Counted from the stretch's first letter, positions 10,011-38,544 are shown. The stretch: DNA of 58,306 nucleotides from Neoconidiobolus thromboides FSU 785 (GCA_025603075.1 MU626388.1:1-58306), one strand, 5' to 3'. Notes: generated from the letters alone by a model not told the origin. Made by a program: numbers and translations.

Positions 10011-12140
10011 TTATTTGTTCTTTTTCAAAAAGCTAAAGATACCTACTTTTTTCTCTTCAGGTTTAGATGGTGGTGCAAGAGATTTACCTTGGAATCCGCC
10101 ATGCTGGAAGCCACCATGTTGAGAGCCACCTTGTTGAAAGCCGCCTTGTTGAAAGCCACCATGTTGAAAGCCACCTTGTTGAAAGCCACCTTGTTGAAAG
10201 CCACCTTGTTGAAAGCCACCTTGTTGCATACTAAATCCGCCTTGTTGACTTTGTTGGAAGCCGCCATGTTGTATACCAAATCCACCTTGAGATCCGCCTT
10301 GCATACCCCCTTGGCTACCGCCTGTAAACTGAGCAGCATTTTCGGGTGTAATTTCTGTCATTCCAGCTTGTCCTTGTGAACTGCCACTGGCTCCTGCTTG
10401 GCTTCCAAATTGACCACCAAAGGTTCCTCCTTGCATACTTCCTTGTGATCCACTGAATTGGCCACCTTGGATACCACCAGCTTGGCCACTAAAGGATCCT
10501 CCAAAAGACCCACCTTGATGACCGCCAAATTGGATCCCCTGAGATCCTCCTTGTTGGCCACCTTGCATACCGCCAAAGGTTCCTCCTTGCATACCACCAA
10601 AGGTTCCTCCTTGCATACCACCAAAGGTTCCTCCTTGCATACCTCCTTGGGATCCGCCAAATTGTCCTCCGAATTGACCGCCTTGAGAACCCCCTTTATT
10701 ACCACCTGTAAATTGTGCTTGATTCTCTGGTGTCACTTCTATATCACCGGATGATCCTTGAGATCCTCCAAATTGTGCTCCAAAAGATCCCCCTTGCATA
10801 CTTCCTTGTTGTCCTCCGAATTGTCCTCCGAAAGGCCCTCCTTGTTGACCATCAAAAGATCCCCCTTGCATATCACCAAATTGTCCTCCCTGTTGTCCTC
10901 CAAACTGACCGCCGAATTGACCACCTTGCGAACCTCCTTGTTGTCCTCCAAATTGTCCTCCTTGTTGACCATCAAAAGATCCACCTTGCATATCACCAAA
11001 TTGGCCTCCAAATAATCCTCCTTGTTGTCCTCCGAATTGCCCTCCTTGTTGTCCTCCAAATGATCCTCCCTGTTGTCCTCCAAACTGACCACCGAATTGA
11101 CCACCTTGTGAACCACCTTGTTGACCATCATTTGACCAAACTGGAGAGTCAACATCACATTCAGGATCAAAATTAGAACCAGTAACAGCACCAATATCTC
11201 TTTGGCTATCTGAGTTACTATTGCTGCTACTTTCATTAGGAGTTAAAGATAAATCGGGTAAATCATCAATTGAATTAACTGGTTGTGGGCTAATTTGCAA
11301 ATCCTTATCTAATGGATTTTTAATTCGAACTTCATATTGGCCATTTTTTCTTTCACATTCAATATTATTATCTCCTGAACAAATTTTCAAAGGTCCATTG
11401 GCACCTGGAACAATGACACATTTTCTTCCATTTTTATTAATGATAATATTTTTATTAATATTAACATTAAAAACAATCGGACGTCCATTAAAATCTACAT
11501 TACAAATTTGTGGCGGACAAGTAATTACACCACACGATGGTCCAACACAAGGTACTGGACATAATGGCCCTGGGCAAGGTACTGGGCAATTGGGCCCTGG
11601 ACAACGAATTGGACATCTTGGTCCTGGGCATATTTTTGGACATAATGGACCTGGACAAACATAAGGACATCTTGGTCCTGGACAATTTGGATTAGGACAT
11701 AACGGACCTGGACATGGTGGTGGTGGACAACCAGGTTCATTTCCAGTCAAACATTTTATGGGACAATTAGGACCTGGACATGGTATACATTGTCCAACGG
11801 TTCCTCCAATACAACAACCGTCATTATCTTTACCATAACAACAATTTTCTTTACCAAGATCTTTACATTTGGCAAAATGTTTTTTGTAAAATAGATAGCC
11901 TAAATACCAAATAATGGGACCTCGTGAATTATCTTGTTTTAGTTCAACACCAGTATCAAAATCAGCAAAATCTACACCTGGAATGGGTTCTTCTGTTAAG
12001 GTTGTATTTCCTTTTGGAGCGTTGTCTATTGATTTTGATTCATAATCTTTCTTTTCCTCACTTTGTTCGTTTTTATTTAATACGGATGCATTTAATACGC
12101 TCCATGATAACGAAATTAAAGTTATTGTATTTAATTTCAT
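10011..12140 (-). CDS. Secreted Cys/Pro-repeat (CPGPxCPxx)n protein with long Gly/Gln/Phe-rich C-terminal region, 709 aa
   Basis: Intact ORF, signal peptide, CCYGxDxxGCC motif, about 7 tandem 9-mers, FNVNINKNIIIN strand, then GGQ/GGFQQ repeats; paralogs at 33681 and 37717. Confidence 0.9.
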   Translation of the reverse strand: MKLNTITLISLSWSVLNASVLNKNEQSEEKKDYESKSIDNAPKGNTTLTEEPIPGVDFADFDTGVELKQDNSRGPIIWYLGYLFYKKHFAKCKDLGKENCCYGKDNDGCCIGGTVGQCIPCPGPNCPIKCLTGNEPGCPPPPCPGPLCPNPNCPGPRCPYVCPGPLCPKICPGPRCPIRCPGPNCPVPCPGPLCPVPCVGPSCGVITCPPQICNVDFNGRPIVFNVNINKNIIINKNGRKCVIVPGANGPLKICSGDNNIECERKNGQYEVRIKNPLDKDLQISPQPVNSIDDLPDLSLTPNESSSNSNSDSQRDIGAVTGSNFDPECDVDSPVWSNDGQQGGSQGGQFGGQFGGQQGGSFGGQQGGQFGGQQGGLFGGQFGDMQGGSFDGQQGGQFGGQQGGSQGGQFGGQFGGQQGGQFGDMQGGSFDGQQGGPFGGQFGGQQGSMQGGSFGAQFGGSQGSSGDIEVTPENQAQFTGGNKGGSQGGQFGGQFGGSQGGMQGGTFGGMQGGTFGGMQGGTFGGMQGGQQGGSQGIQFGGHQGGSFGGSFSGQAGGIQGGQFSGSQGSMQGGTFGGQFGSQAGASGSSQGQAGMTEITPENAAQFTGGSQGGMQGGSQGGFGIQHGGFQQSQQGGFSMQQGGFQQGGFQQGGFQQGGFQHGGFQQGGFQQGGSQHGGFQHGGFQGKSLAPPSKPEEKKVGIFSFLKKNK

Positions 12141-13003
12141 TATGTATATGTTAGTATAATTATATTTTTAATATAGACCGGCTACTAAAGTTTTATTAAA
12201 GATTAAAAAAAGCAAAGAGAAAGTGGCAAGTATTTTATTTTTATAATAATTAAAGTGTCATATTTGTTATAGTTGATTGTTTTTACTAGTTTTTCAAGTA
12301 TTTTGGAATATCTTTCTCTTTTTGCTGTTATCTTCTTGTCCATCATTTTTGGTTGCTTTTATTACTTTTTACCTTTTTTATTAATATTTATTTTTTTGAA
12401 TTTAAATTTTCATTAGGCGTTTTATATATTGTAAGATACATTGTACATTATATTTTATAGAAAATAATGTAAAAAATATGTAAAAAATATACACAATGGT
12501 TATTATCTTATTTATTTATTAAATAATTATTACAATTTATTAACCTTGTAATTATTATTGTTTACTTAATTTCACCTAATGACGATCATGGACTCAATTT
12601 TTTATTTAATTAAAATTAACTTAAATTGGCCCCTTAAAATTTTAACTTTCAAATTAACAAAATATGAAACTTTTAAGTTATCTACATAATATCCAAAGCT
12701 ATTATTATTTGTACTAAAATATAACATTAACAACTAATCTACATGTAATAAAAAAATCTGATTTTTATTTTGGAAAATAAAGAATTTAAGATAAGCTAAG
12801 TATCCGCTAGCCAACGTGCTATTAAAATTGTTAAATAAAAGGCCGTTACAATAAAGCAATAGTTATAAAAAATTCATTTTTTTATTAATACCAAAATAGG
12901 ATGAAAGAGAGAAGGGAAAAGGGAGAGAAATAATACAAATTCTAATAGTTGAAATCCAGTACTGAAACAAGCTCTTTTAGTCTATTTAAGAGTATAATAA
13001 AGC

Positions 13004-13543
13004 CTAGTATTTAATAGACTTAAGAAGCGCTGATGAAGGATGATGGGTACCAGCTTTAGTTAGTAACGCTGATTTAACTTTAGAACCGATCATAAACCTT
13101 GATAATACTCTCTTAGCAACAGCAGCAAAATAAGCTTGCTTACCAAATAAAGTACCAATAGTAACCAACATCAAACACCAAGAAGGTGGTGATAAAGTTA
13201 AATGAGCAGCACGATATGTCCATGGGCCATCTTTAAAATTACCTTGAATACCCACAAAATTTAAACTTGGTTGTACTAATTTTAAACTTAAGGAGCCGGT
13301 AATTGAGAATACAGTACCTACTATCAAGACATCTTTCCACCATAGCATGGTGTATTTGGGTTGAGTTGTAAAATGAGGTTTACCTGGGTTAGCACGGGCA
13401 CCAATAGTGACTTTATTTAATAATGTCTTTGGCTGAGGATTACTTAATTTGTTCAAGTAATGATGATTACTAAAGATAGATTCTTTAATATGATTCAATT
13501 TCATATTTTTTAAAGTTTGAGGTAAAGCGTGGATATGTATCAT
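13004..13543 (-). CDS. Small membrane protein, DUF6787-like (tentative)
   Basis: Basic N-terminal extension then VFSITGSLSLKLVQP...GPW.YR...PP.W.LMLVTIGTLFGKQAYF..V.KR.LSRF, recalled as resembling a bacterial uncharacterised membrane family. Confidence 0.55.
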   Translation of the reverse strand: MIHIHALPQTLKNMKLNHIKESIFSNHHYLNKLSNPQPKTLLNKVTIGARANPGKPHFTTQPKYTMLWWKDVLIVGTVFSITGSLSLKLVQPSLNFVGIQGNFKDGPWTYRAAHLTLSPPSWCLMLVTIGTLFGKQAYFAAVAKRVLSRFMIGSKVKSALLTKAGTHHPSSALLKSIKY

Positions 13544-15355
13544 TTTTTTATATAGTTTATAAGTTGAAAAGTTTGATTTTATTTTATATAAGGTGACTTT
13601 TTGTTGTTTATTTATACTTTATTTTCTCTTATTTTTTCCACCCTCTTTATTATACTATTTTTTATCTTTGTATTCTCTATACACCCTTAATCTTAGTTAT
13701 TTGACAATTAATCCTCGTTTCAGCTGATTGTAAGTTTAAGCTAATAGTTGTTGACTTAGCCAACAATGACATAATTGTATTTTTGATTAACTTAATTTAG
13801 TTAAAGTTTATTAATTTAATATTAATTTATAATAAAAAAGTAATAAAAATGCAATATCAAATATTAAAACTAACTTCAAATAGAAGATAAGCAATAATGA
13901 TAATAAATACTAATATTATCCGAATCTTTTTTACATAGTTTTATTTTTCTTTTATATTCATTTAATAGTAGTACTATAATAAGAAAGGTGAATACTTAAT
14001 TGGTTATTCCTCTTACTCCACTTTTAATGTTTTATTAACATAATTATTAACATCCACCCTTAATCTGGAATTATCCTTAATCGCTGCAAATTTTTTAAAA
14101 TGATAATTTTTTGAATCTTTGATTAAACACTACAAATTATATTATTATTCCTGCCCTCTCTAAAGTTTAAGGTTGTAAATAATACTTTTGATTTTTATTA
14201 AAGTAGTATAGTAAGTTTCTGACAACTGTTAGTTTAAATAAGGAATTTCTAACTAATCTATATTCGGATCAGCCATCATTTTTAATTATCAAACAATATT
14301 TGATAAAATTGTTATTTGTTTTAATAGTTTTATTTATAGTAAAATTAGCTATTTAGTATTTAAGCTTGTTGGCTGTTACTTTATTTACTTTATTGTAAGC
14401 ATTTAATATAACTTATCTATTACGATTATATAATTTTAATTTTAAAAAAGTTGCTATTATCGAACAAAGACGCATTTTTAAAAATAATGACAATAATTTT
14501 TAATACACCATTCTAATTTAATAAAATACTTGCCCATTTTTGGTGTAAGAAATTACAACCAAAGCAACACGAATGTTTCTCTTACTTTTATATTTAACTA
14601 CTACTTTTTAACTTATAATGCATAAAAAATGGACAAAATATCAAAAAAGGGCATTTCTTGTTATAATCTAATAAAATCCAGGTTACAATTATTTAAGCTT
14701 ATCGAATTTTGAGAAGCAACTGATTCTGACCATTCGATGAATGTAAATATTTCCATGTCTGATTTAAACATAAGGTTATTACTCATCAGAGCATGAAGGA
14801 TTCCTTTATTAGATTTGATTGAAGACAATATATTGTCTACTAGTTAAATTTACTACGAAATTTAGCATGGGAACTTGAGGATTAAGCCTTAGAGCCCAGG
14901 GGTTGATGGTAGTAATTATATCAAATGTGCCAAGCAACCCCAAAATAGCTGTTTTGAATGAAAATATAAACCATTTTTTTTTACTTTTTAAAAATTATAG
15001 AATCAGGATAGTAGCTTTAATACTAATATTTGAATAAACACTATTATTATTTTATTATCTTGTTGTCTTATTTTATTATTTTTAAGTAGAAGTTAAAACT
15101 GAAATCATATCATAATATGATATATCATAGTTAATATCAATAAGTTATAAAATTACAATATTGGGATGACGTTTTTTTGTTTTAACAAATTTTAATTTTA
15201 TAGTAAATAAAAAATGATCAACTGAACAAAAAACATTCATAACTAAGTTAGTTTTTCAAACCATTTTATTACGATTAATACAATACAAAATTTAAGAAAA
15301 TGAAGTTGATAGTGATGAACTTAATGAAAACGTCTAATTTTAGGTAACTAAAAGT

Positions 15356-16293
15356 ATGAGAACAATCAGGTGATAGATAATATTCATTTTTTATAGCACT
15401 TTAGTTCCAGCTCTGTCTCAGATTAAAATTTACACCAAAACTGGTGATAAAGGTGATGATTAATAATAGTTAAACGATTATGTAGTTAAATAAAAAATCA
15501 AGGTAAAAGTTCCTTATTTAATGGAGAGAGAAGAGAAAAAGACGATATAGTGTTTGAAGCATTAGGAACAACGGATGAATTAAGTTCGATATTAGGGTAA
15601 ATCTTCAGTTCACTGTTTCATTTAGATTTAAATTTATTTTATATTTAGTTTAGCGAGAGAGTATTGTCAAGAGGAAAATAATGGATTGAATGAACCTTTA
15701 AAAAAAGTAGTATTTATTAGCAATATTTATATAATATTTTAATAGTTAGATTCAAAGTACTTTATTAGACATTGGTGCTCACATAGCTACACCAAGGAAT
15801 AATACAATTCATGAAAAAAGAATAGGTAAATTTAGCCTTAGCTCATATAATGATTAATGAGAATTTTTTTTAGAATTGACAAAATTTGATCAAGAAAATA
15901 ATTTAGTAAAAGAAATGGAACAGCATATTGATCAATTATCTGCTGATTTACCTCCATTAAAGAACTTCATCTTACCTGTAAATAGGATTACATGAAAAGT
16001 TATTAATATTATTAACAGTTATTAATATTTAGTCTGGAGGTAAAGCCAGTTCAACATTGCATATAGCTAGGTCATTAACACGCCGAGCTGAGCGCAGAGT
16101 GATACCACTAATAAAAGAAGGACAAGTGGATAACAATATAGGGATTTATTTGAACAGGTAAAATTTAAAATTTAGAACTTAAAATTAGTTTTATTTAATT
16201 TTAATTAGACTAAGTGACTATTTTTTTGTAATGGCACGATACAGTGCTCATTTAGGAAAATATCAAGAGTTGATTTACACTAAGAGGGGATAA
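15356..16293 (+). CDS. MMAB: ATP:cob(I)alamin adenosyltransferase (PduO/MMAB type), 8 exons
   Basis: Hand-spliced: [39 protein letters not shown]...[15 protein letters not shown]...[13 protein letters not shown]...HIARS..RRAER...[15 protein letters not shown]; 7 GT-AG introns; missed by ORF track. Confidence 0.93.
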
Positions 16294-17832
16294 CTTGAAT
16301 CGAATCTTTGGTATTAAATAAAGTGGAGGTATCCATATTCCATTTCATTTGATATAACTTTTTTATGACGTCGTTTAACTTATGCTCGTTTTTTATACTG
16401 TTGTAGTCATCTATACTATTTATATTTCCCTTATTGTTGTTATAACTATTATTATTTAACTCTAAATAATAATAGTAATAAATTAAATAATAGGCTTTAA
16501 ATTTAGTTTCATTATCGATATTAGTTGCCAAAAATAAGTAAAATTGCTTATCATTCTTAGTAATAAAAAAATGATTTTGATTTAAATACTTAATCATTGT
16601 TTCAGCGGGTAATTCAAATTTAATATTACTTAAAGAAGGATTAACATCAACAAAGTTACCATAAATCTTGGATTTATATTTCAAAAAGTAACTTTCTTTA
16701 TCTGCAATCTGACTAGGTGATAACAACTTGTGTTCTTTAAAATAATTATCTAACAATAAATCAATTCTTTCTAAATTAAAATTTTTAGTAATAACACATT
16801 GATTCGCTTTGTGAATGGAATATAAACTTAAATAAGAAAAGGGCAAAAACCCCAATACTAAGTTAGGTAACTCATTTCCTATAAGTGGTGTGATCACTAC
16901 CCCCAACATCGTACCTAAAACTGCAGCTAAAGTACTTTGACTACCACTTTTGGCCGTTATGTCTCCTAAGCTAAACTTTTATTTAGTACTTGTTAATTAA
17001 TCTTCCTTTAAGTTTAACACTTACTTATCTTTCAATGCAAAGCTTGAGTTCATTTGAGCTCTATAAAAGTAAATATTAGCTAAAACAGAGCACAATAGAC
17101 TGCAACTTTACCTAGTAGCTGATGCGGCCAACCAAGAAATGTTTTTACCTAATTCAAAACTATTACAAAACTAAAAAAATAAAAAATAAAAAAAGTACCA
17201 ATATTAGAAACGGAAGCCAAAGGTAAGAATAAATGAGGAACACAAGGAGAAAACAGTTCTAAAAGAGAAGCTAATTGCATAGAAATTGCGGACCACATAC
17301 GATGCCTTTTTGGGTTTGAGTCAAACTTGTTATTCATTAAACTTACATAGATAACCCCACCTAGTTGGCCTAAACCATCTTTTATGATCCAGTTTAAGGC
17401 TGCTGCCATCTATTTTTAGGCTCTTTTAGTTTGTTGGTTGGTAGTTTTATATTTTTCTTACCGGTATACTACCAGCACCTAAACCCATAGCATATAATAA
17501 ACTTTGGGTTGATAGAACTAAATATGAGTTCAAGAATCAAATTATACCTTATTCAAATTGATTTTCTTACCACCTGTCACTGTACTTGTAACATTATGTA
17601 AAATTTGCCATTGGGAATACTTCAAATACCCAATGTCCACAGTGGTTGGATATCCCTTTGGTAAAAATAAATCAATCATTCTAGCTTTGAAGTTTTGTTT
17701 CATAGTCAACAGACTTTTTCCAGCATTATTTGAGGTCTTACTTGGTAAGAGTTTTAATTTCCTATTGTATATGTTTTTATTTTGCTGTATCTTATAATGA
17801 AATCTTCTTATATTTGGGTTATTAGCTAACAT
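16280..17832 (-). CDS. RUS1/DUF647 (root-UVB-sensitive, RUSF1-like) family protein, multi-exon
   Basis: LFLPKGYP..V..GYLKYSQW, AAALNWIIKDGLGQLGG, FDSNPKRHR, LGDITAKSGSQSTLA motifs across exons. Confidence 0.88.
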
Positions 17833-18135
17833 TTTGTAAAAATAAAGGTATTCGGCTAATTTGTAATTTTTTTTAGTAAGCAGTCATTGCTATTTAATTG
17901 GTTGAAGTTAGCATCTGCTCACAAATCACAGTTGCTATGGTTCAAGGCTTTATCCCAACACAATTTTTTAAAAATTGCTATTAATGAAAGTGTTTTGAAG
18001 ATAAGAAAGTTTTAGCTTTTAATTTTTCATTAAAAAGGCTATTAACTATTAAAGAATTTAACATTTTATTACAAAGTAAACATTTGAATCATATATACCG
18101 TATATACTTTAATTCTCTAGTATAATTTATTATAT

Positions 18136-24577: not shown

Positions 24578-25147
24578 ATGAAGTTTTTATTTTTTATAGC
24601 GTTTATAACATCACTTAAAAGTGAAGAGATCAATTCATTTGAACAAAAGGGTTGTAATGCAACACATGAAGGAGGTTTAAAAAATCATCAAACGACACTT
24701 TCTAGAAAATGCTTTATATCTAGTTTACCAGGTAACTGTTTAGGATATTATAGAAGTTATCATTATGATCCAGAGATATCTGGCTGTGTACTATCGTCGT
24801 TTGGAGGATGTAATGATGGGTGTATGGCCTTTAAATCTAGAGCTGAATGTGAAAAAGCTTGTATTAAAGGAAAAGCAGTGAAGTTAAATAAGACAGAACC
24901 TTTTGCTCAAAAAGGTTGTGAGCTTAGTATCACTGCTAAATATATATCAGTTTTTGATGATTTACCGGCTAAATGCTTTATTGCTTCTAAAAAAGGGGAC
25001 TGTATCATTACCAAACCATCTTACCATTTTGATTATATTAAATCTAAATGTGTTTCTTCTATTTTTGGCGGATGCGATGATGGCTGTTTAGCGTTCAAAA
25101 CGAAGTTGGAATGTGAGAAAAGTTGTATAAAATCAGACACAGAATAA
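24578..25147 (+). CDS. Secreted double Kunitz/BPTI-like protease inhibitor
   Basis: Signal peptide; two C-x8-C-x15-C-x7-C-x12-C-x3-C domains with YHY/F and FGGC. Confidence 0.85.
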   Translation: MKFLFFIAFITSLKSEEINSFEQKGCNATHEGGLKNHQTTLSRKCFISSLPGNCLGYYRSYHYDPEISGCVLSSFGGCNDGCMAFKSRAECEKACIKGKAVKLNKTEPFAQKGCELSITAKYISVFDDLPAKCFIASKKGDCIITKPSYHFDYIKSKCVSSIFGGCDDGCLAFKTKLECEKSCIKSDTE

Positions 25148-28202: not shown

Positions 28203-30728
28203 ATGGTGAATTTTACTGTAGAACAAATTCGTGCTATGATGGACAAGGCATCTAATGTCCGTAACATGTCTGTCATAGCACACGTTGATCATGGAAAATC
28301 TACTTTGACTGATTCTTTAGTATCAAAGGCCGGTATTATTTCAGCTTCCAACGCTGGTAACGCTCGTTATACCGATACCCGTCAAGATGAACAAGATCGT
28401 TGTATTACTATTAAGTCCACTGCCATTTCTATGTTCTTTGAGCTCCCAAAAGAAAGTATGGAAGATGTCAAGCAAAAAACGGATGGTAGTGAGTTCTTGA
28501 TTAATCTTATCGACTCACCCGGGCATGTTGATTTCTCATCAGAAGTGACTGCTGCACTTCGTGTTACTGACGGTGCTTTGGTTGTTGTAGATTGTGTTGA
28601 TGGTGTATGTGTCCAAACCGAAACCGTCTTACGTCAAGCTCTTACTGAAAAGATCAAGCCTGTAGTAATCATTAATAAAGTAGATCGTGCTTTGTTAGAA
28701 CTTCAGATTGAAAAAGATGCTCTTTACCAATCTTTCTGTCGTACAATTGAATCTGTTAATGTCATCGTCTCTACTTATGTTGACGACGCATTAGGTGATG
28801 TTCAAGTTTATCCAGAGAAAGGTACAGTTGCTTTTGGTTCTGGTCTTCATGGATGGGGTTTTACTCTTCGTCAATTTGCTGATCGTTACGCTAAGAAATT
28901 TGGAGTTGATAAAGAAAAGATGATGAAGCGCCTTTGGGGTGAGAATTATTTCAACCCAAAGACTAAGAAATGGACCACCAAACCTACTGATACCGATGGC
29001 AATTCTTTGGAACGTGCTTTTAATTTATTTGTTTTGGATCCTATTTTTCGTATTTTTGATTCAATCATGAATTTCAAGCAAGATGAAGTAACTAAGGTAT
29101 TAGAAAAATTGGATATCCAACTTAAGCCTGAAGAGAAAGAGTTGACCGGTAAGGCTTTGCTTAAGATTGTTATGCGTAGGTTTTTACCTGCTGCTGACGC
29201 CTTACTTGAGATGATTGTTATCCATCTTCCATCCCCTATTACTGCACAAAGGTATCGTGCTGCGGCTCTTTATGAAGGGCCAGCCGATGATGAATCTTGT
29301 ACTGCTATTAGCAACTGTGATCCAAATGGGCCTCTTATGCTTTATGTGTCTAAGATGGTACCTACTTCAGATAAAGGTCGTTTCTATGCCTTTGGTCGTG
29401 TCTTTGCTGGTACTGTCAAAGCTGGTGTAAAAGTTCGCATCCAAGGTCCTAATTACGTCCCAGGTAAGAAAGATGATCTCTTTGTTAAATCTATTCAACG
29501 TACTGTTCTTATGATGGGACGTTACATTGAACCAATTGAGGATTGTCCAGCTGGCAATATCATTGGCCTTGTTGGTGTTGATCAATTCCTTCTTAAATCT
29601 GGTACTATTACTACTTCAGAAACTGCACATAACATGAAGGTCATGAAGTTCTCTGTCTCCCCTGTAGTGCGAATTGCTGTTGAGGTCAAGAATGCCAACG
29701 ACCTACCAAAATTAGTCGAAGGTCTTAAACGCTTATCAAAGTCCGATCCATGTGTACAATGCTACACTTCTGACTCTGGTGAACATGTTGTTGCCGGTGC
29801 TGGTGAACTGCATCTTGAGATTTGTCTTAAAGACCTTGAAGAAGATCATGCCGGTGTACCAATTAAGACTGGTGATCCAGTCGTACAATATCGTGAGACA
29901 GTTCAAGCTGAGTCTGATATCACTTGCTTATCTAAATCTCCAAATAAGCATAACCGTATCTTCATGAAAGCACAACCATTGGACATGGACCTTGCATTGG
30001 AAATCGAAGAAGGAAAGATTAACCCAAGAGATGATGTCAAAATTCGTGCCCGTCATCTTGCTGAGAAATACAGTTGGGATGTCAATGATGGCCGTAAAAT
30101 TTGGTGCTTTGGTCCAGAGACTACTGGTCCTAACCTTTTGGTTGATCAAACCAAGGCTGTACAATACCTCAATGAAATCAAAGATTCATGTGTTGCTGCT
30201 TTCCAGTGGGCAACTAAAGAAGGTGTGTTATGTGAGGAGAACATGCGCGCCACACGCTATAACATCCTTGATGTTACTTTGCATGCTGATGCTATTCATC
30301 GTGGTGGTGGCCAAATTATTCCAACTTGCCGTCGTGTTATTTATGCGTCACAGCTTACTGCCAATCCAACATTGCTTGAGCCTGTCTATTTAGTAGAAAT
30401 TGCAGCTCCAGAAAACGTTTTAGGAGGTATTTACTCAGTAGTATCACAGCGACGTGGCCAAGTAATCGAAGAGGCTCAACGTCCAGGTACACCCATGTAC
30501 ACTGTTAAAGCTTACCTTCCCGTAAATGAGTCGTTCGGTTTCACTTCAGCTTTACGTTCCCAAACTGGTGGTCAGGCTTTCCCACAAGCTGTTTTTGATC
30601 ATTGGGAGCTAATGGCAGGCAATGCACTTCAAGAAGGTAAAATCAATAAACTTATCACTGATGTACGTAAGCGTAAGGGCCTAAAGGCAGAGATTCCAGC
30701 GTTGGATAGCTACTTTGATAAATTATAA
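28203..30728 (+). CDS. EFT2: Translation elongation factor 2, intronless
   Basis: [23 protein letters not shown], diphthamide motif [15 protein letters not shown]; full-length 841 aa. Confidence 0.99.
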
Positions 30729-32213
30729 GCAGGCTTCAATCATCTATTTGTAATCGCATCTTTATAAACTATCCTATAGGTTGTACTATATATCTTATGA
30801 ATAAAAGTTCTACAACTTTTGCTCAAGTTAATTTTTATTCGTTAGATTTAGATTTTTATTTAAAAGTGTATTATTGTTTATAGGTGCTTGGATGCGCAAT
30901 ATCTCGAGAAACCTAATATTAAGATTAAACTTTGAACCGAATAGAGGTGTTTTTTTAGCTTTGTGATATAGAACTAATTAAACCTTAAAACTTACTGTGT
31001 TCTGGAAATTTGATTATAGTTTTTCAAACGAATATGATTAGTATATAAAACGTTTAATTTGAAGGAGCCAATTTTTACAAGTAAAAAATACATAAGAAAA
31101 GGTTTGATGGTACAAAGAGTTTATGGATTAATAATAAGGAAATAGCCGTTTATCTGCCAAATATATCACTATCAAGGTATGACCCGGATAAATGCTATGG
31201 GTTCATAAGGTACATAAATTTTACTTAACTTTTTAATTAACGTTATAGCTGAAATTAGTAATGAATATTATATTAGCATTATAGAACATATCCTGGCTTA
31301 TGATATTTAATGGACAGGCACATACAATAAACGTATCAACGAATCACTTTTATGTAATCAAGAAATAGATATTTCAAAGAAGATTTAAAAATATTAGCTA
31401 TTAATTAAAACCAACACACTATAATCTTTTTGGAATCTTGAAGAGGCTAAAGGTCCAAAGTGATTTATTTTGCGATTATAAAGAGTTGAAGTGTTCAGTT
31501 GGGGCATGAGGTGAATGATCTGTGGATAAGGTAGGTGTAAAGTTGTAAGCGAAGGATGGCATTACTTATTTTAAGAGAGAGATTTTAAGGAAAGAGCTCT
31601 TTGCCTTAACATAAGATTTTTTCTATTTAGCGACTTTGACTTCTACATCACTTGAATTTACCTAGATGTGAAATAAAGAGGTGGTATTGGATGGGAGTAG
31701 GGAATTGTCGTCTAGAGTTTTAGATAAAAGGAGCGAATGGTCCAAAACCCTATAGCAACCATATTAAACTTCAAGTTGAATTTTAGCCATTTTTGATTAT
31801 TAGAAGGACTGGATAATGAACAGCCATACCTTCTAATGATAAAAACTCATCCTGTATCATATATTAATTTAAGTAAATAAAGGCTTTAGATCTATGAAAT
31901 TTAGTGTTAGTCATTCAATTGATACTGATATATGTGATAAAGAGCTTCTTTTAAATTTTGTTTTAGTTATTTTATAAAACTTAGTATCAATAAAGTATTG
32001 AATCATTTTTTGCTTCATTTGAAATAACTAAAACAATTAATTATGCAAGTTGGTGTAATCGAAACAGAATAAAAGTTAAATAGCCTTGAAAAGTAACTTA
32101 GCTTTAAGTGCTGATAAAACTAAATTTAAATCCCATAGTAAATAACAATCCAAAAAATAAAATAACATCAAAAATTAAGTAAAAGTAAAAACTACATCTA
32201 GAATTTATTTGCA

Positions 32214-32624
32214 ATGAATCGATTAACAACAATAATAAAAAGCAACTACATAAGAAGCGGATTAAAGAATATAAAATTGGAACAATTGAGATATTTTCAA
32301 AGTGCAACAACTGGAGAAAAGTTTAACTATCCAAAGGAGACAAGTCCATTTTTAACTATTCCAACTCAAAAATGTACATTACCCTATTTTGTACGTCGTA
32401 CTAAGTACCTCTCATTACCGGTTTATTCGGAATTCAAAAACGGAAACACTCGCAAGTTGACTATTGTTCGTAGAATTCAAGGAGATTTAACTCAACTTAA
32501 AACGGACTTATTGACCCAATTCCCAGAATGGACTATTTCTATTTCACAAATCAACTCTCAAATTGTTATTAAAGGTCAAAAATGCCATGAGGTTAGAGAT
32601 TGGTTATCCAATAAAGGATTTTAG
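32214..32624 (+). CDS. IMG2: Mitochondrial large-subunit ribosomal protein mL49 (Img2)
   Basis: Basic presequence; YFVRRT...LPVY...GN.RKLTIVRRIQGD...IVIKG...V..WL..KGF. Confidence 0.85.
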   Translation: MNRLTTIIKSNYIRSGLKNIKLEQLRYFQSATTGEKFNYPKETSPFLTIPTQKCTLPYFVRRTKYLSLPVYSEFKNGNTRKLTIVRRIQGDLTQLKTDLLTQFPEWTISISQINSQIVIKGQKCHEVRDWLSNKGF

Positions 32625-33680
32625 ATTCAGTTGTTATAAAAATAAATTTATTTTAAAAGGAGAATCGGGGCACTATTGAATAAATACATTTCGCATTAAT
32701 CCACATTTTTATTCATTCCATACATTGAATTAATCCTATAACGCTTCATAATAATATAGAGGAACTTTTTAATAATTTTATCTTTTTATAAATTTTCATT
32801 CTTTTATATTTACTTGACTTTATTTTTTAGCTTAATAAGTGCATCAAAATATTCAATAGTGTTATTTTCATAACTTTTTATTCAAAATAGAATCAGTATT
32901 AAAATCGTTTATTCACTTTATTATGTAGACAAAATGGCTATCCTATTTTTGTTTTTAATATTCGATTTTATATTTAGCATTTCAACCGATCTCAGTTGTC
33001 TCAGAGAAAAAACAGCAAACGAGTTAGCTAAATTGGTTTAATTATTTTTTAACTGAACTGTATGGTTAAAATTAGATGTTAAACCATCTAAGATAAAACT
33101 TTTACTAAACTATTAAAATACCATCAAATGATGAAAAGCTTTTGCATAGCACTATCTTAGTTAAAGGCTAACTGGGAGCTTGACTTCAACTATAAATTAC
33201 TCAGCCTTGTTAAGATTCATAAAATAATCTCACAGCTTTGAGTAAGTAAAATATGATAGAAGTTAATAACTACAACATCATAAAAAAATTGCTCAAATTC
33301 TTTTGGAGATAAATGATACTCACTGTTACAACTAGTGATTTGCTTTTTTATAGAGATGAGTTTAAATTTTCTATTAACTTATTAATTTCAAACTATCAAT
33401 CAATAAAATAAATGTGAAAAATATTCTCTGCTAAATAAGCAATAAAAAAGGCAACTAGATCAAACAGAACAAATCCTATTAATGAGATACAGTAAAAGAT
33501 CAACTTAATTAGTAAATTAATATTCAATAAATATAGAAAAGAAAATTGATAATCAACAAATTATAAAATCAAGTATTTAAAGATCATCTTAAAAAGATTG
33601 ACGGCAAAGCTTATATAAAAGAGACATTTTTGTACTTAATAGTTATTATTATTTCTTCTGTGAAGAGTATTTTATAAAAG

Positions 33681-34535
33681 ATGAAATTAAGTTATGCTTT
33701 GACAGTTTTGATTAGTATGCTACTAATGTCTAGTAGCGTGTTTGCTCAAGAAGATTCAGTGGGAGGAGATAATGAAATGCCAAAAAACGGATCAATGGTA
33801 ATAAATGGAGCTGAATTTGCTAGCTTTGAAACCCCAGGTGAAATTGGTAAAAAATCCGAACGTACCATTATTCCAATCATTTTATTGTTGAACCATATCT
33901 TTAAACAACATCAACCACCAAAACCACAATGTCCAACCACTAATTGCTGTTATGGAGTAGATTCTAACGGCTGCTGTATTGGTGGTTCTGGTAATTGTAA
34001 TCCATGTCCTGGTCCAAATTGCCCATGGCCATGTCCACCCGGAAATCCTAACTGCTTCCAATGCCCACCAGGATGGACCGGATGTAGGAATCCATGCCCA
34101 GGACCATATTGTCCATACCAGTGCCCAGGTCCTAACTGCCCATATATTTGTCCAGGTCCATATTGTGGCAACGTTTGCCCAGGTCCTAACTGCCCTATTC
34201 GTTGCCCAGGTCCAAACTGTCCAGTAGCATGCCCAGGTCCTTATTGCCCACAACCATGCTTTGGACCATATTGTGGATCTGTTATTTGCCCACCTCAAAT
34301 TTGTAATATCAATTACCCATACCGTCCAATTATTTTCAACATTAATATTAATCAAAATATTATTATTAATGGAGACCAACCAAACTACGTTTGCATTAGA
34401 GTTCCTAACCAATTTGGCGGGTATTACAGAGTTTGTGGTCCAAGAGATAATCTCAAATGCTATTTAACTCCAGAAAATCAATACCAAGTACGTATTATGG
34501 ATCCAACCGATAACAGAATTTCTATTTCACAATAA
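33681..34535 (+). CDS. Secreted (CPGPxCPxx)n Cys/Pro/Tyr-rich protein, 284 aa
   Basis: Signal peptide; same architecture as 10011-12140 without the Gly/Gln tail. Confidence 0.9.
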   Translation: MKLSYALTVLISMLLMSSSVFAQEDSVGGDNEMPKNGSMVINGAEFASFETPGEIGKKSERTIIPIILLLNHIFKQHQPPKPQCPTTNCCYGVDSNGCCIGGSGNCNPCPGPNCPWPCPPGNPNCFQCPPGWTGCRNPCPGPYCPYQCPGPNCPYICPGPYCGNVCPGPNCPIRCPGPNCPVACPGPYCPQPCFGPYCGSVICPPQICNINYPYRPIIFNININQNIIINGDQPNYVCIRVPNQFGGYYRVCGPRDNLKCYLTPENQYQVRIMDPTDNRISISQ

Positions 34536-34611
34536 ATTAACTTTGTGTAGCCAATATTAGTATTTTTCATATTTGTTACATTTTAACTTTAGCACTAATA
34601 ATATAGCATAT

Positions 34612-34710
34612 GGGGGTGTATTTTTGTATTTAAGAATTTTACTAACAAATTTTCCGCTTAAATAGTGCTTAAAAAATGGAAGAAATAATGAAGTCAAAAA
34701 AAACACTCCC
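34612..34710 (+). mobile_element. MITE copy 76 bp after the CPGP gene stop
   Basis: ATAT TSD. Confidence 0.9.
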
Positions 34711-35610
34711 ATATAATGTTTGGTATTACGAACTACTAACTATTACAAACAAATGGCTAGGCAACTAGTATAGTACAAAAACTGTATATAAAGTATTAGT
34801 AAATGACTAACTCAATAGTAAAGTGCTACAACATTTATACAAGCCTTTTGAGGCATTTTTTGATTAGATTGCCTTTATCCTAATATGATTAATTTATTAA
34901 GCTAATCCACTACTTATAGAGCGTTAAACTTAAAAAATACTGTTCCACAAAAACATCTAACATCTAAGAATTGTAAGTTACTTTATTGCAAACCCGCTCT
35001 CTGATTATGGCATATAATTTATTTAATACATTAGACTTAGGCCATTATTCTTGTTCCTTCTGTTTAATTAATTTGCTGAGTGGAAGCCTCATTGGTTAAA
35101 CAAGCTGCTGCTGCTTCAGATGGAGATGCTTAAATTGAAAAATGTTGAACTAATTCAACCTGGTTCTGCTTTAAATCGTGTTAGAATAGAAGATACCTTG
35201 TTTGGTTATTATAAACTTTATGGCGATAAGTCACTGTTTAATTTTCTATGTTAAACAAGTTAGATAAAAATTGTTTATGAATAAAGCATTTAAGCTGGAA
35301 CATCAATTTGTGTATGACATTTATAAAAAATAATTTTGTGTGAAAACGGGTGGAATTTAAAAAAGGATATAAGGTTTTGCCAGGTATCCAAATATCCATC
35401 CTGAAGGTGTCATCAAAGCTTTACCTAAAAAAGAGAGTATGCTTTATGGCTATAATTAAGAGCTAAACCCAGAAACGGATCAATTAAGTAAGTTTATAGC
35501 TAGATTCTGGGTCGTGAATTACATTATCCATCAACCAAAATTAGTAATAAAGATAGCTATTGTCAAATAAAATCAGATATAAAGTAAACAAATGATTAAA
35601 ATAACCATAT

Positions 35611-35708
35611 GGGGATGTATTTTTGTATTTAAGAATTTTACTGACAATTTTTCCACATAAATAGCGCTTAAAAAATGGAAAAATAATGAAACTAAAAAAA
35701 ACAGCCCC
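35611..35708 (+). mobile_element. MITE copy
   Basis: ATAT TSD. Confidence 0.9.
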
Positions 35709-36637
35709 ATATTATAATATTGTTATTTTACTTTTGTTTCTTGAACTGTCGAAGATTTCAAATTTCTACAGTCATACTAATGTAATACAGAGAGCTTTGA
35801 GAAATTAAGTTATAAACAAGTTAATCTTTTCAAATTACTTAGGACTAATGATTTACTAAAATGATGACAGACATGAAAGCACCAATTATAGTTAAGAGTC
35901 CAGAATACTAATAAAAATTTATTCAAATTTTTAAATTGGCAAACTGTGAAAAATGATGGGATAAAAAATTACATAACTATAGCAACGCATTAAGGCCAAA
36001 TGAGTCCTGAAATTAGTTTGAATACGGTCAAATCAAGGGAAAAGCTGTATCTGGGACTATTAAAGGAAATAAAGTGGCCTCAGTAATCATGGAAGTATAA
36101 TAAACGTTATACGTGAGGACATGATATAAAATAAGCAACTACTCTAAAAAGAGTATAAAAACATGGAAGCTAAGTTAAATGAAATATTAAACTACCATTT
36201 TAGATTTTCAAAATTACTTGTCAAGTCTTAAAATATATGGAAATAATTTACCAATAACGATATAGCTAAATCCTACCCATTTTTATTTTATTTATATACT
36301 TGATAACCAAATGTAGGACCAACATTATATTTTTCTCAAAAAGAAGACAACAACATGCTTAAAGAGGAATCCAAGAAGGCTTTGAAATTTTTTTAGATAA
36401 TACAGAATAGCTATATTCTCATATTACAAAGCTTGTGCTTGAAACTTAAAAAAATCATATATAAGGTAGTCTCAAAAAATGAAATCAAGTTACACTTTAG
36501 TGATTTTGATTAGTATGCTATTAATATATAGTAATTTATTTGCTCAAAGTAGCCTGATAAATGATATTTTAGATGATTTTAAAAGTAATAGTAATGTGAA
36601 TAACAATACGACAATGATGGTGAACACAATAGAATAT

Positions 36638-36734
36638 GGGAAGTATTTTTTTGATTTTACTGCTTTTTTCTATTTTTTAAGTACTATTTGAGTGAAAGGC
36701 CATTAGTAAAATTCTTGAGTAAAAAAACTATCCC
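36638..36734 (-). mobile_element. MITE copy in CPGP pseudogene
   Basis: ATAT TSD; empty homologous site gaATTTgct at about 33813. Confidence 0.88.
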
Positions 36735-36977
36735 ATATGCTGGCTTTGAGACACCAAGAAGATCTAATATTGTTCATGAACTTTATGTTATTAGCGCTCT
36801 ATCATATAAACTCTTTAAGCAATATAATCTAGCGCCTAGATCCTCAACTTCCAACTACTACCATAGAATGGATAACAATGGATATTGTATTCATGGAATT
36901 GAGTTGATGGCAACTGTCCTTTATGATCAGGGCCAAATTGTACAATACGCTGCTTAACTGGTATGGGAATTAGATAT

Positions 36978-37075
36978 GAGGATGTATTTTTTTGTTTAAG
37001 AATTTTGGTAACAATCTTACCACTCAAATAGCGCTTAAAAAACGAAGAAGTAATGAAATTAAAAAAAACATCCCC
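36978..37075 (+). mobile_element. MITE copy in CPGP pseudogene
   Basis: ATAT/ACAT flanks; removal restores colinearity with the CLTG...CPPP region of paralogs. Confidence 0.88.
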
Positions 37076-37716
37076 ACATCTTCTTCTTTTATGCTCGGAT
37101 TCAAAATGCCCATACCTATGTTCTGGCCCCAGATGTCCTTATATTTACCTACGACCATTATACTTGGAACTATGTCCAGGTCCAAAACGTCATATTCGTT
37201 CCTCAGGCCTAAATTGTCTAGTACCATGCTCTAGACCAAATTGTGGAACTCATGTTTATTCGCCTCAAATTTGAAATGCTAGTTACCCATATAGACCAAT
37301 TATCTTTAATATTGATATCAGAAAAAACATTTTTTACCCAGCAGATAAGTGAGATTTTATTTATTCTATTCTTCTTGAGATGATGCAACTTAGAAAATTG
37401 TGGACCAAGTGGAAATGTTGGACTTCAAAAGACTCTAAGTCAATATCAAATACGAATCAATGATTCAACTGATAGTGATATTATTGTTTCATAATTCGAA
37501 TAAATAGAATAGCAAAAATAACTAATTGTTTTTTTTGAGACTTTTTCATCATATTTATTTAGTTGGCTTGTTATATTTTACGCTTGTTTTATAAAAATAA
37601 ATAAACTAAAATTATATCATTGAAATAAATCGTTAATCATTAGAATTATTAAAACTATTAAAATTTAGGTGCAATTTAAATTATTATTAAAAGTTTAAAT
37701 TGAAAAATCACTTATT

Positions 37717-38544
37717 TTATTGTTGATCTAATGGAGTAATTGATAATCTGTCATCGGTAGGCTTTAAAATCTTGACTTGGTATTGATTATTTGGTAAACG
37801 GTCACAACGTAAGCAATCATCAGGTCCACAGATTTTAATTGGCTTAAGTCCTTCATAAATGATTATACATTTCCCTTTACTATTGTTATTAATGATAATA
37901 TTTTGATTAATATTAACATTAAAGATAATGGGTCTTCCGTTAAATCCAATATTACATACCTGTGGAGGGCAAATAATATTTCCACAATTTGGTCCATAGC
38001 ATGGAACTGGGCATAAGGGCCCTGGACATGGCACTGGACAATTTGGACCTGGACAAACAATTGGACATCTTGGACCTGGACATAATTTTGGACATAATGG
38101 GCCAGGGCAGATATATGGACAATTAGGTCCTGGACATGGGTATGGACAATTAGGCCCTGGGCATATAGGAGGAGGACAACCAGGTTCTCTGCCAGTCAAG
38201 CAAGGTATTGGACAATTAAGGCCTTGGCATGGTGGACATTGGTTATTTCCACCTCCGAGACAGCATCCATTGGTATCTTTTCCATAACAACATCCCTCTC
38301 TTCCAAATTTACATTTGCCAAAATGATTTTTGTAAAACAAATAACCTAAATACCAGATAACTGGACCACGAGATTTACCCTGTTTCAGCTCGACTCCAGT
38401 ATCAAATACTGCATAATCAAGTCCAGGTTGTGGATCACTTAATGTGTTATTCCCACTAGCATTGGAATCAGAATCTTCAGCAAAGGCTATCCCAGATAGA
38501 CTTAATATAGTTAAGACGCTTGCGATTGTAGATAAAAATTTCAT
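37717..38544 (-). CDS. Secreted (CPGPxCPxx)n Cys/Pro-rich protein, 275 aa
   Basis: Signal peptide; closest to 10011-12140 (DTGVELKQ..SRGP.IWYLGYLFYK.HF). Confidence 0.9.
   Translation of the reverse strand: MKFLSTIASVLTILSLSGIAFAEDSDSNASGNNTLSDPQPGLDYAVFDTGVELKQGKSRGPVIWYLGYLFYKNHFGKCKFGREGCCYGKDTNGCCLGGGNNQCPPCQGLNCPIPCLTGREPGCPPPICPGPNCPYPCPGPNCPYICPGPLCPKLCPGPRCPIVCPGPNCPVPCPGPLCPVPCYGPNCGNIICPPQVCNIGFNGRPIIFNVNINQNIIINNNSKGKCIIIYEGLKPIKICGPDDCLRCDRLPNNQYQVKILKPTDDRLSITPLDQQ

What the first reader, a model, noticed from the sequence alone, without database searches (positions are those of the whole stretch)
10011..38544. Family of secreted (CPGPxCPxx)n proteins: a candidate minicollagen-like disulfide-network structural system
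Seen: three intact genes (10011-12140, 33681-34535, 37717-38544) and one pseudogene share one layout. It is signal peptide, acidic spacer, basic site (SRG/SERT), aromatic helix (PIIWYLGYLFYK), CCYGxDxxGCCxGG, about 6-7 tandem 9-mers with alternating C-x4-C-x3 spacing, CPPQ(I/V)CN, an amyloid-like FN(V/I)NIN(Q/K)NIIIN strand, and a small Cys beta domain. I recognise no named fungal family for it. Knowledge: regularly spaced Cys plus polyproline is how cnidarian minicollagens/NOWA and coccidian oocyst-wall proteins polymerise by disulfide exchange. Inference: this may be a convergent wall, adhesive or spore-discharge polymer, with the Tyr-rich paralog allowing dityrosine links.
Basis: partly seen in the sequence, partly recalled or inferred. 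Interest (0 to 1): 0.82.

Follow-up and report, generated by a model that had tools for sequence, protein, structure and literature searches.

The report
Orphan secreted cysteine-proline repeat proteins
An insect-pathogenic fungus (probably Conidiobolus coronatus) has three transcribed genes and one dead copy for secreted proteins built on a fixed ladder of nine-residue cysteine-proline repeats; the family has no relatives elsewhere, probably forms a disulfide-braced extracellular material, and has an unproven function.

Summary
Three intact intronless genes (10011-12140 -, 33681-34535 +, 37717-38544 -) and one pseudogene hit by two MITEs (about 36479-37420 +) share one layout. It runs: signal peptide, acidic spacer, aromatic segment, CC-x7-CC knot, a fixed array of CPGPxCPxx 9-mers, CPPQxC, an Asn/Ile strand, and a small Cys beta domain.

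The paralogs are old (dS above 1) and under purifying selection (array dN/dS 0.15). All three are transcribed.

No Pfam, PDB or Atlas match exists. Among about 15 billion proteins, only the window's own genes have the full architecture. EF2 places the host in Entomophthoromycotina, probably Conidiobolus coronatus.

Two partial relatives turned up:
- Gene B's C-terminal motif is 72% identical to rare small secreted Streptomyces proteins.
- The same 9-residue period (Cys 1, Gly 3, Cys 6) occurs in uncharacterised surface proteins of loricate choanoflagellates.

The proteins are not minicollagens: there is no Gly-X-Y, no CRD pattern and no sequence similarity. The structural reading is still the best one. 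Cys parity is always even in the array, each repeat unit keeps its own residues, and gene A carries a 369-aa Gly/Gln/Phe tail. It is inference only, and both AlphaFold runs failed. Interest is moderate.

The parts
10011..12140 (-). Gene A, 709 aa: the CPGP module (aa 1-300), a linker, and a Gly/Gln/Phe tail
   Evidence: ORF and alignment. RNA-run contigs hold 0.42 and 0.38 of the sampled words of its 5' module. The exact protein is not in the public protein collection.
11502..11843 (-). Gene A CC-x7-CC knot plus the 9-mer Cys/Pro array, ending in CPPQIC
   Evidence: Motif scan, Cys spacing, dN/dS 0.15.
11271..11501 (-). Gene A C-terminal domain: an Asn/Ile strand and a beta domain with 3 Cys
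   Evidence: Alignments.
10014..11120 (-). Gene A low-complexity tail of 369 aa: 38% Gly, 22% Gln, 11% Phe, nearly uncharged. Two ...TPEN.AQFTGG punctuation motifs divide it into three blocks.
   Evidence: Composition; DNA tandem repeats of period 12, 15, 24 and 60.
33681..34535 (+). Gene B, 284 aa: the Tyr-rich paralog (15 Tyr) with 31 Cys
   Evidence: ORF. One 936-nt RNA-run contig covers 33547-34482 without gaps or mismatches while the flanking intergenic DNA is uncovered, so the gene is transcribed and has no intron across the covered stretch (33547-34482).
33945..34304 (+). Gene B knot plus array. It has a two-Cys insertion (CFQC...GC) in the irregular part.
34305..34532 (+). Gene B C-terminal domain, 72% identical to small secreted proteins of Streptomyces
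36479..37420 (+). Pseudogene of the family. It has stops, lost Cys codons and two MITE insertions (about 36639-36740 inverted, 36974-37079 direct). It is left as found.
   Evidence: DNA alignment, repeats, no RNA-contig coverage outside the MITE parts.
37717..38544 (-). Gene C, 275 aa, 30 Cys
   Evidence: ORF. RNA-run contigs from four runs match pieces of it with no mismatch.
37954..38292 (-). Gene C knot plus array
37720..37953 (-). Gene C C-terminal domain with 4 Cys

Best explanation
These are secreted extracellular-matrix proteins (conidial or hyphal wall, or adhesive) of an entomophthoralean fungus, probably Conidiobolus coronatus.

Proposed mechanism:
- The signal peptide takes the protein into the ER.
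- There the CC-x7-CC knot and the fixed array of CPGPxCPxx units oxidise into a closed, intramolecular disulfide ladder. With Pro at 3-4 of every 9 positions, this can only be a stiff, turn- or polyproline-II-type rod about 110-120 residues long, not helix or sheet.
- The C-terminal module is an amphipathic Asn/Ile strand plus a small beta domain closed by a C-x13-C disulfide. It is the assembly end. It pairs with like strands, and in genes A and B it offers an odd, unpaired Cys for an intermolecular disulfide.
- Gene A adds a 369-aa uncharged Gly/Gln/Phe tail that would act as a cohesive gel or elastomer.

Status of each part:
- Shown: the anatomy, conservation, transcription, secretion signal, and absence from all other known genomes.
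- Inferred: disulfide topology, rod shape, self-assembly, and location in the wall or mucilage.
For: - Typical signal peptides are present in genes B and C, and a weaker one in gene A.
- Composition is 15-16% Pro and 10-11% Cys, and the array is nearly uncharged.
- The strongest purifying selection falls on the knot plus array: dN/dS is 0.15-0.17, against 0.23-0.69 for the N-terminus and 0.28-0.53 for the C-terminus.
- The Cys count from the first Cys to CPPQxC is 26, 28 and 26. It is always even, and gene B's insertion brings exactly two Cys. The C-terminal domains have 3, 3 and 4 Cys, which leaves an odd Cys in genes A and B.
- Unit number and length are fixed. The three variable residues of each unit are 46% identical between same-position units of different paralogs, against 13% for other unit pairs (permutation p < 1e-4). 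This means a defined structure, not a slippery repeat.
- Gene A's tail is 38% Gly, 22% Gln and 11% Phe. This is the composition class of elastomeric and gel proteins. It is joined to a Cys/Pro module, as in cnidoin (PMC4321713).
- The same 9-residue period (Cys 1, Gly 3, Cys 6) recurs in extracellular proteins of loricate choanoflagellates and marine protists. Some have a predicted C-terminal membrane-spanning segment (read by eye, not tested). There it sits like a stalk, in one case carrying a Cu/Zn SOD domain.
- All three genes are transcribed and the pseudogene is not.
Against: - There is no localisation, proteomic or biochemical datum of any kind.
- AlphaFold gave no usable model: pLDDT was 35.8 for whole gene C and 37.8 for the array with a 29-row alignment. 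Rod shape and disulfide topology are therefore untested.
- Word depth in RNA-run contigs is low, about 2-9. That is not what one expects of a bulk wall protein in those samples, though the stage sampled is unknown.
- The genes lie among secreted Kunitz inhibitors, a double CAP protein and a GH20 hexosaminidase. They are lineage-restricted and show birth and death. This is the usual profile of host-interaction effectors.
- No GPI signal or known wall-anchoring motif is present in any of the three proteins (read by eye, no predictor run).
Confidence: 0.4

Rival explanations
1. They are host-directed secreted effectors or toxins. The disulfide-braced proteins would be released during insect infection to bind or disable a host target such as cuticle, haemocytes or immune proteases. 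The fixed array would act as a protease-resistant scaffold.
For: - The genes lie in a stretch rich in secreted host-interaction-type genes: three tandem-Kunitz genes, a double CAP gene, a GH20 and a secreted hydrolase.
- The family is an orphan with a pseudogene.
- N- and C-terminal regions evolve faster than the array.
- Exact-match transcripts occur in RNA runs filed under several other organisms, which could be infected hosts.
- CAP proteins are expanded in C. coronatus, and secreted insecticidal proteins are reported from it (PMC12387763).
Against: - No region shows dN/dS above 1.
- There is no similarity to any toxin or effector family in Pfam or PDB.
- A 369-aa Gly/Gln/Phe tail on gene A is hard to reconcile with a diffusible effector.
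- The identity of the other 'organisms' is coded, so expression in a host is not established.
Confidence: 0.25
2. They are antimicrobial or competition proteins. A Cys/Pro 9-mer protein would act on bacterial membranes, as reported for mammalian SPRR proteins.
For: - There is a weak sub-threshold Pfam hit to SPRR2 over the array (15.8 bits, cut-off 32.2).
- SPRR1 and SPRR2 are reported as bactericidal (PMC8912919).
- The C-terminal motif is shared with soil Streptomyces, so there has been ecological contact.
Against: - The mature proteins are not cationic: pI is 5.3, 7.3 and 8.1, and the array is almost uncharged.
- SPRRs have no signal peptide and no disulfide knot.
- The similarity is one of period and composition only.
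Confidence: 0.08
3. They are an extracellular redox or metal buffer. The many Cys would bind Cu or Zn or scavenge oxidants outside the cell.
For: About 30 Cys per 250 residues. The host genome is reported to hold many tyrosinases, which are copper enzymes (PMC12387763).
Against: - Proteins that pass through the ER are normally oxidised.
- The parity-preserving gain of Cys points to disulfides.
- There are no C-x-C or CxxC metal-type motifs; the spacing is 5,4 throughout.
Confidence: 0.04

Closest known systems
Cnidarian nematocyst wall proteins: minicollagens, NOWA, CPP-1 and cnidoin (Cys-rich domains, CRDs)
   Same: Both are secreted and have an N-terminal pro-region. Both have short Cys/Pro-rich modules with Cys every 4-5 residues. 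In cnidoin, as in gene A, such modules are joined to a long Gly/Gln-rich low-complexity elastic domain (PMC4321713, PMC6989532). Both hosts fire a projectile from a pressurised cell (own knowledge for Conidiobolus).
   Different: These proteins have no collagen Gly-X-Y and no CX3CX3CX3CX3CC pattern. There is one long fixed array of 26-28 Cys instead of 6-Cys end domains. They show no sequence similarity to solved CRDs. Cnidoin's propeptide ends in Lys-Arg, and no dibasic site is conserved here. The resemblance is convergent at most.
Small proline-rich proteins (SPRR2, Pfam PF14820) of the mammalian cornified envelope
   Same: Both have a nonapeptide repeat with two Cys and several Pro, and so the same 4/5 Cys period (own knowledge). 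SPRR2 is the only Pfam model that touches the array.
   Different: The score is 15.8 bits against a cut-off of 32.2. SPRRs are cytosolic, have 3 or so repeats, and are cross-linked by transglutaminase through Gln/Lys-rich ends. The proteins here have a signal peptide, a CC knot and a beta domain.
Uncharacterised C-x-G-x-x-C-x-x-x arrays of loricate choanoflagellates (Helgoeca nana, Bicosta minor) and marine metatranscriptomes
   Same: Both have a period of 9 with Cys at 1 and 6 and Gly at 3, in arrays of 4-19 units within secreted or membrane-anchored proteins. Profile E-values reach 4e-16.
   Different: Those arrays are Pro-poor, with an 18-residue G/A super-repeat. Their flanking domains are unrelated, and neither the N-terminal knot nor the C-terminal domain is shared. 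Homology and convergence cannot be told apart. They have no Pfam family and no known function.
Rare small secreted Streptomyces proteins (S. syringium 86 aa; Streptomyces sp. NPDC002324 74 aa; two from Logan assemblies)
   Same: The gene B C-terminal domain is 72% identical to the S. syringium protein, including the Asn/Ile strand and the C-x13-C loop. The core motif YVCIRVPN..GG.YRVCGPRDNL..LTP is shared by all of them.
   Different: The bacterial proteins are this mini-domain alone behind a Sec signal peptide. They lack the third Cys and the last strand. They lie in mobile, variable regions with no conserved neighbours, and are absent from 185,579 species-representative genomes. Their function is unknown too.
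Gly-rich elastomers and gels (abductin, FG-repeat hydrogels, glycine-loop proteins such as loricrin), for gene A's tail only
   Same: Both are uncharged Gly-rich repeats punctuated by Phe or Met every 4-8 residues (comparison from own knowledge).
   Different: There is no sequence homology, and the comparison is by composition only. The mechanical behaviour is untested.

Membership tests
Minicollagen / NOWA / cnidoin CRD proteins | Central collagen Gly-X-Y triple-helix segment (minicollagens) | tested here: not met
   No run of 5 or more G-x-x triplets in any CPGP module. The definition is taken from PMC6989532.
Minicollagen / NOWA / cnidoin CRD proteins | Cys-rich domain with the pattern CX3CX3CX3CX3CC | tested here: not met
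   The regex is absent in all three proteins. The spacing here is 5,4,5,4.
Minicollagen / NOWA / cnidoin CRD proteins | Sequence similarity to solved CRD structures | tested here: not met
   A profile of the family against all PDB chains gave no hit even at E <= 10.
Minicollagen / NOWA / cnidoin CRD proteins | Switch from intramolecular to intermolecular disulfides that builds an insoluble polymer | not testable with these tools
   This needs non-reducing gels and disulfide mapping. Only Cys parity is available: even in the array, odd in the C-terminal domains of genes A and B.
SPRR2 (PF14820) | Pfam score at or above the gathering threshold | tested here: not met
   15.8 bits against 32.2.
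SPRR2 (PF14820) | Cytosolic protein with Gln/Lys-rich ends for transglutaminase cross-linking | tested here: not met
   Signal peptides are present. The ends of genes B and C are not Gln/Lys-rich. Only gene A has a Gln-rich tail, and it is Lys-poor.
Fungal hydrophobins | Eight-Cys pattern C-CC-C-C-CC-C and a Pfam hydrophobin hit | tested here: not met
   The pattern is absent, and there is no Pfam hit at E <= 1.
Coccidian oocyst-wall proteins and any other curated Cys-rich wall family in Pfam | Match to the family model | tested here: not met
   No Pfam family at E <= 1, apart from two sub-threshold chance-level hits.
9-residue two-Cys arrays (C-x-G-x-x-C-x-x-x) of choanoflagellate and marine protist surface proteins (unnamed) | Period 9 with Cys at positions 1 and 6 and Gly at 3, in tandem | tested here: met
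   An ungapped in-phase alignment of 29 arrays has Cys invariant and Gly at 90% or more in two units. Profile hits run from 4e-16 to 1e-3.
9-residue two-Cys arrays (C-x-G-x-x-C-x-x-x) of choanoflagellate and marine protist surface proteins (unnamed) | Shared flanking domains, which would be evidence of common descent | tested here: not met
   The matches cover only profile positions about 110-200. The flanks are unrelated.
Streptomyces small secreted YVCIRVPNGNGGSYRVCGP proteins (unnamed) | Core motif with a C-x13-C loop | tested here: met
   Gene B: BLASTP E = 8e-13, 72% identity, and whole-library E = 8.5e-11. Genes A and C keep the two Cys and the strand but only 36-47% identity.

The most novel reading that the evidence does not exclude
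The CPGP proteins, together with gene A's Gly/Gln/Phe tail, would be the disulfide-cross-linked, elastic wall material that stores and releases energy when Conidiobolus shoots its conidia, or that forms the hairs of villose conidia. This would be a fungal system convergent with the minicollagen-cnidoin copolymer of cnidarian stinging capsules. Its assembly domain would have been exchanged with soil Streptomyces.
Probability: 0.1. Interest if true: 0.85.

Novelty: new variant of a known kind. Interest (0 to 1): 0.5.

Why it matters
If the structural reading is right, this is an independent invention of the 'Cys/Pro cross-link module plus Gly/Gln elastomer' design. So far that design is known from cnidarian stinging capsules and, more loosely, from cornified skin. 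Here it would occur in a fungus that launches its spores ballistically.

It would give a genetically simple system (three genes in 28 kb) for studying disulfide-braced polyproline rods as biomaterials. It would also give a candidate for the unknown protein basis of conidial wall elasticity or adhesion in Entomophthorales.

Two side results stand regardless of function:
- A 9-residue two-Cys repeat (Cys 1, Gly 3, Cys 6) recurs in unrelated eukaryotic surface proteins and has no Pfam family or solved structure.
- A mini-domain is shared at about 70% identity between a fungus and a few Streptomyces strains, which is a likely cross-kingdom transfer.

If the genes turn out to be effectors, they are one more orphan secreted family of an opportunistic pathogen. 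That would be of local interest only.

Tried and rejected
- **Pfam:** the three proteins gave only sub-threshold hits (SPRR2, LIFR_N).
- **PDB sequence and profile searches:** the whole family and the C-terminal domain gave no hit at E <= 10.
- **ESM Atlas:** the whole protein, the C-terminal part and the N-terminal part all scored 0.63 or less, which is noise level.
- **AlphaFold2:**
  - Gene C with a 4-row alignment gave pLDDT 35.8.
  - The array with a 29-row in-phase alignment, including the choanoflagellate arrays, gave pLDDT 37.8.
  - Both models were unusable, so no fold search was run.
- **Word-index search of the 5.8-billion-cluster library:** it found only the window's own proteins, plus one N-rich Logan protein that shares the repeat alone.
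- **JGI metagenome scans:** neither peptide patterns nor a DNA pattern for the Asn/Ile strand found relatives. Nine DNA hits were chance matches in AT-rich DNA.
- **Scans of 185,579 bacterial and archaeal species genomes for the C-terminal motif:** two scans found nothing.
- **Arbuscular mycorrhizal host:** this was my first guess, because RNA runs of many 'organisms' hold exact transcripts. I rejected it because EF2 is closest to Massospora (84%) and Entomophthora (83%), and its 90% cluster has a single member.
- **Antimicrobial reading:** weakened by neutral or acidic pI.
- **Kex2-type processing at the 'basic site':** no conserved dibasic site exists.
- **Literature searches:** searches for CPGP repeats and for Conidiobolus secretome or wall data found nothing on this family.
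- **Gene neighbourhoods of the Streptomyces relatives:** no conserved partner was found.


Full report
**What is there**

The window is AT-rich (about 22-43% GC per 2 kb). At the stated coordinates there are three intact ORFs: gene A at 10011-12140 (-), 709 aa; gene B at 33681-34535 (+), 284 aa; and gene C at 37717-38544 (-), 275 aa.

They align end to end over the shared 275-300 residues at 50-65% identity. Every Cys of the N-terminal knot and of the repeat array is invariant. A six-frame motif scan finds the diagnostic motifs only in these genes, plus one remnant at 37119.

That remnant belongs to a fourth copy at about 36479-37420 (+). It aligns to gene B at DNA level but has stops, lost Cys codons and two insertions of about 100 bp. 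The insertions are copies of a 106-nt MITE also present at 34608-34713 and 35607-35712. I described this pseudogene and did not mend it.

**Anatomy**

From N- to C-terminus the layout is:
- a signal peptide (typical in genes B and C, weaker in gene A);
- an acidic spacer with a conserved [DE][FY]A.F[DE]T motif;
- a short aromatic segment, well kept in genes A and C and aliphatic in gene B;
- a C-x(4-7)-CC-YG.D..G-CC-.GG knot;
- an irregular Cys/Pro stretch;
- six regular CPGPxCPxx units plus a degenerate seventh, with strict 5,4 Cys spacing;
- CPPQ[IV]CN;
- RPI[IV]FN[VI]NIN[QK]NIIIN;
- a domain of about 50 residues that AlphaFold draws as beta strands.

Gene A continues with a linker and a 369-aa tail of 38% Gly, 22% Gln and 11% Phe. 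The tail is almost uncharged and falls into three blocks.

**Is it real and constrained?**

Yes. Synonymous divergence between the paralogs is saturated (dS 1.2-1.9). dN/dS is 0.15-0.17 in the knot plus array, 0.23-0.69 in the N-terminal region and 0.28-0.53 in the C-terminal domain.

The array does not evolve in concert. The three variable residues of a unit are 46% identical between same-position units of different paralogs, against 13% for other unit pairs (p < 1e-4). Unit number is the same in all three genes.

Cys counts from the first Cys to CPPQxC are 26, 28 and 26. Gene B's extra insertion brings exactly two Cys. The C-terminal domains have 3, 3 and 4 Cys, so genes A and B carry an odd Cys there.

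**Transcription**

- In four RNA-labelled public runs, contigs match genes B and C without a mismatch.
- One 936-nt contig spans 33547-34482 colinearly, so gene B has no intron across the stretch that contig covers.
- Intergenic DNA and the pseudogene are uncovered apart from the MITE copies.
- Gene A's 5' module is held by RNA runs at 0.42 and 0.38 of sampled words.
- Depths are low, and the run identities are coded. Stage and host therefore cannot be read.

**Whose genome?**

The window's EF2 is fungal. Its best matches are Massospora cicadina at 84%, Entomophthora muscae at 83% and Neoconidiobolus thromboides at 81%. No protein is 90% or more identical.

Published figures for Conidiobolus coronatus fit the window: 27.5-27.65% GC, 39.9-44.2 Mb, and a 2016 reference assembly of 1050 scaffolds (PMC12387763). 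I infer C. coronatus or a very close relative. This is an inference. My earlier guess of an arbuscular mycorrhizal fungus was wrong.

**Relatives**

There is no Pfam family, no PDB sequence match even at E <= 10, and nothing meaningful in the ESM Atlas.

The word-index search of 5.8 billion clusters returned only the window's own two proteins, plus one Logan protein that shares the repeat alone. An exhaustive profile search of 1.84 billion representatives gave 37 hits. Only the window's own proteins cover the whole profile. The other hits are of two kinds.

1. **Repeat-only hits.**
   - The proteins that were retrieved and read are mostly C-x-G-x-x-C-x-x-x arrays of 4-19 units, in secreted proteins or proteins with a predicted C-terminal membrane segment; the rest are unrelated short Pro/Cys repeats.
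   - Some come from the loricate choanoflagellates Helgoeca nana and Bicosta minor, and some from marine metatranscriptomes.
   - They align in phase with the fungal array.
   - They have no Pfam family, and one carries a Cu/Zn SOD domain.

2. **A C-terminal-only hit.**
   - An 86-aa Streptomyces syringium protein has a Sec signal peptide followed by the Asn/Ile strand and the C-x13-C loop.
   - It is 72% identical to gene B, which is closer than gene B is to genes A or C.
   - Three further small Streptomyces proteins share the loop core only.
   - These genes lie in mobile, variable regions without conserved neighbours.
   - The S. syringium gene has the lowest GC3 of its neighbourhood: 0.69, against 0.90-0.98 for core genes.
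   - The motif is absent from 185,579 species-representative genomes.

An Asn/Ile/Phe-only strand is compositionally alien to a 70% GC genome, and the bacterial proteins sit nearest one fungal paralog. I therefore lean towards fungus-to-bacterium transfer, but about 55 residues cannot settle the direction. JGI metagenomes hold no relative.

**How it most likely works**

With Pro at 3-4 of 9 positions, the array cannot be helix or regular sheet. The following points suggest a closed, intramolecular disulfide ladder that forms a stiff module of fixed length:
- invariant Cys;
- Cys gained only in pairs;
- position-specific variable residues;
- fixed unit number.

The C-terminal module exists on its own as a secreted bacterial protein. 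It is therefore an autonomous domain, and its alternating Asn/Ile strand is the obvious candidate for strand-to-strand assembly. The odd Cys in genes A and B could make an intermolecular bond.

Gene A's uncharged Gly/Gln/Phe tail belongs to the composition class of cohesive gels and elastomers. Its fusion to a Cys/Pro module mirrors cnidoin, which has a Gly/Gln-rich elastic domain flanked by minicollagen CRDs and lies behind a signal peptide and a propeptide (PMC4321713).

I therefore rank an extracellular structural or adhesive role first, at about 0.4. All mechanistic steps beyond the sequence features are inference.

**Rivals**

- **Host-directed effector or toxin (about 0.25).** The genes lie among tandem-Kunitz, double-CAP, GH20 and secreted hydrolase genes. 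The family is an orphan with a pseudogene, and its ends evolve faster than the array. Against this, there is no positive selection, no toxin-family similarity, and gene A's tail is an awkward fit.
- **SPRR-like antimicrobial role.** This is weakened by neutral or acidic pI (PMC8912919).
- **Metal or redox buffering.** This is unlikely given ER passage and parity-preserving Cys gains.

**Comparison with the known**

These proteins are not minicollagens. They have no Gly-X-Y, no CX3CX3CX3CX3CC and no similarity to solved CRDs (definition in PMC6989532). They are not SPRRs (15.8 bits against a 32.2 cut-off, and SPRRs are cytosolic) and not hydrophobins. The minicollagen/cnidoin comparison stands only as a functional analogy.

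**Verdict**

The family is a genuine, transcribed, strongly constrained orphan family, confined as far as public data show to this 28-kb stretch of one fungal lineage. Two unexpected partial relatives, in Streptomyces and in choanoflagellates, add interest.

I rate the interest at 0.5 and the novelty as a new variant of a known kind (disulfide/proline repeat extracellular proteins).

Noticed in passing
L002:10001-10261 (Streptomyces syringium, JBFASJ010000006.1), compared with window 34305-34532: An 86-aa secreted Streptomyces protein is 72% identical to gene B's C-terminal domain. It lies between a phage-portal-like gene, an HNH endonuclease and a large serine recombinase, and has the lowest GC3 (0.69) of its neighbourhood. 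This is a likely cross-kingdom transfer whose direction is unresolved. Three more Streptomyces proteins share the loop core only.
   Followed up: partly
window 34608-34713, 35607-35712, 36974-37079 (direct); 36639-36697 (inverted): A MITE family of about 106 nt. Two copies sit inside the CPGP pseudogene and one lies just downstream of gene B. In one RNA run, contigs that contain it reach word depths in the thousands, so it is present in many transcripts.
   Followed up: partly
window 24578-25147, 39071-39646, 55115-55726 (+); 4962-6107 (-); 43052-44731 (+); 51015-51869 (+): The CPGP genes sit in a stretch rich in secreted-protein genes. There are three tandem-Kunitz/BPTI genes (rare in fungi), a double CAP-domain gene, a GH20 hexosaminidase and an alpha/beta hydrolase. 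It looks like a secretome island.
   Followed up: partly
P0012, P0025, P0026 (Helgoeca nana, Bicosta minor); P0005, P0011, P0016 (marine metagenomes): Long tandem arrays of a 9-residue C-x-G-x-x-C-[GA]-x-x unit (18-residue super-repeat) occur in surface proteins of loricate choanoflagellates and marine protists. They have no Pfam family and no solved structure. P0012 joins such an array to a Cu/Zn superoxide dismutase domain.
   Followed up: partly
L001:15-1052 (Logan SRR15182417): A 345-aa Asn-rich protein from an unknown AT-rich organism carries nearly the same CPGPxCPxP 9-mers as the fungal family. Its flanks are unrelated and it has no evident signal peptide. This is either independent origin of the repeat or a very old module.
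   Followed up: no
window 10011-12140 (-): The exact 709-aa product of gene A is not in the 15-billion-protein collection, although genes B and C are. The public annotation probably models this gene differently, for example with a spurious intron in the repetitive tail, or omits it.
   Followed up: no
window 28203-30728 (+): An intronless EF2 gene has no relative at 90% identity or more in public data. Its nearest relatives are Massospora at 84% and Entomophthora at 83%. This shows how isolated the lineage is in sequence databases.
   Followed up: yes
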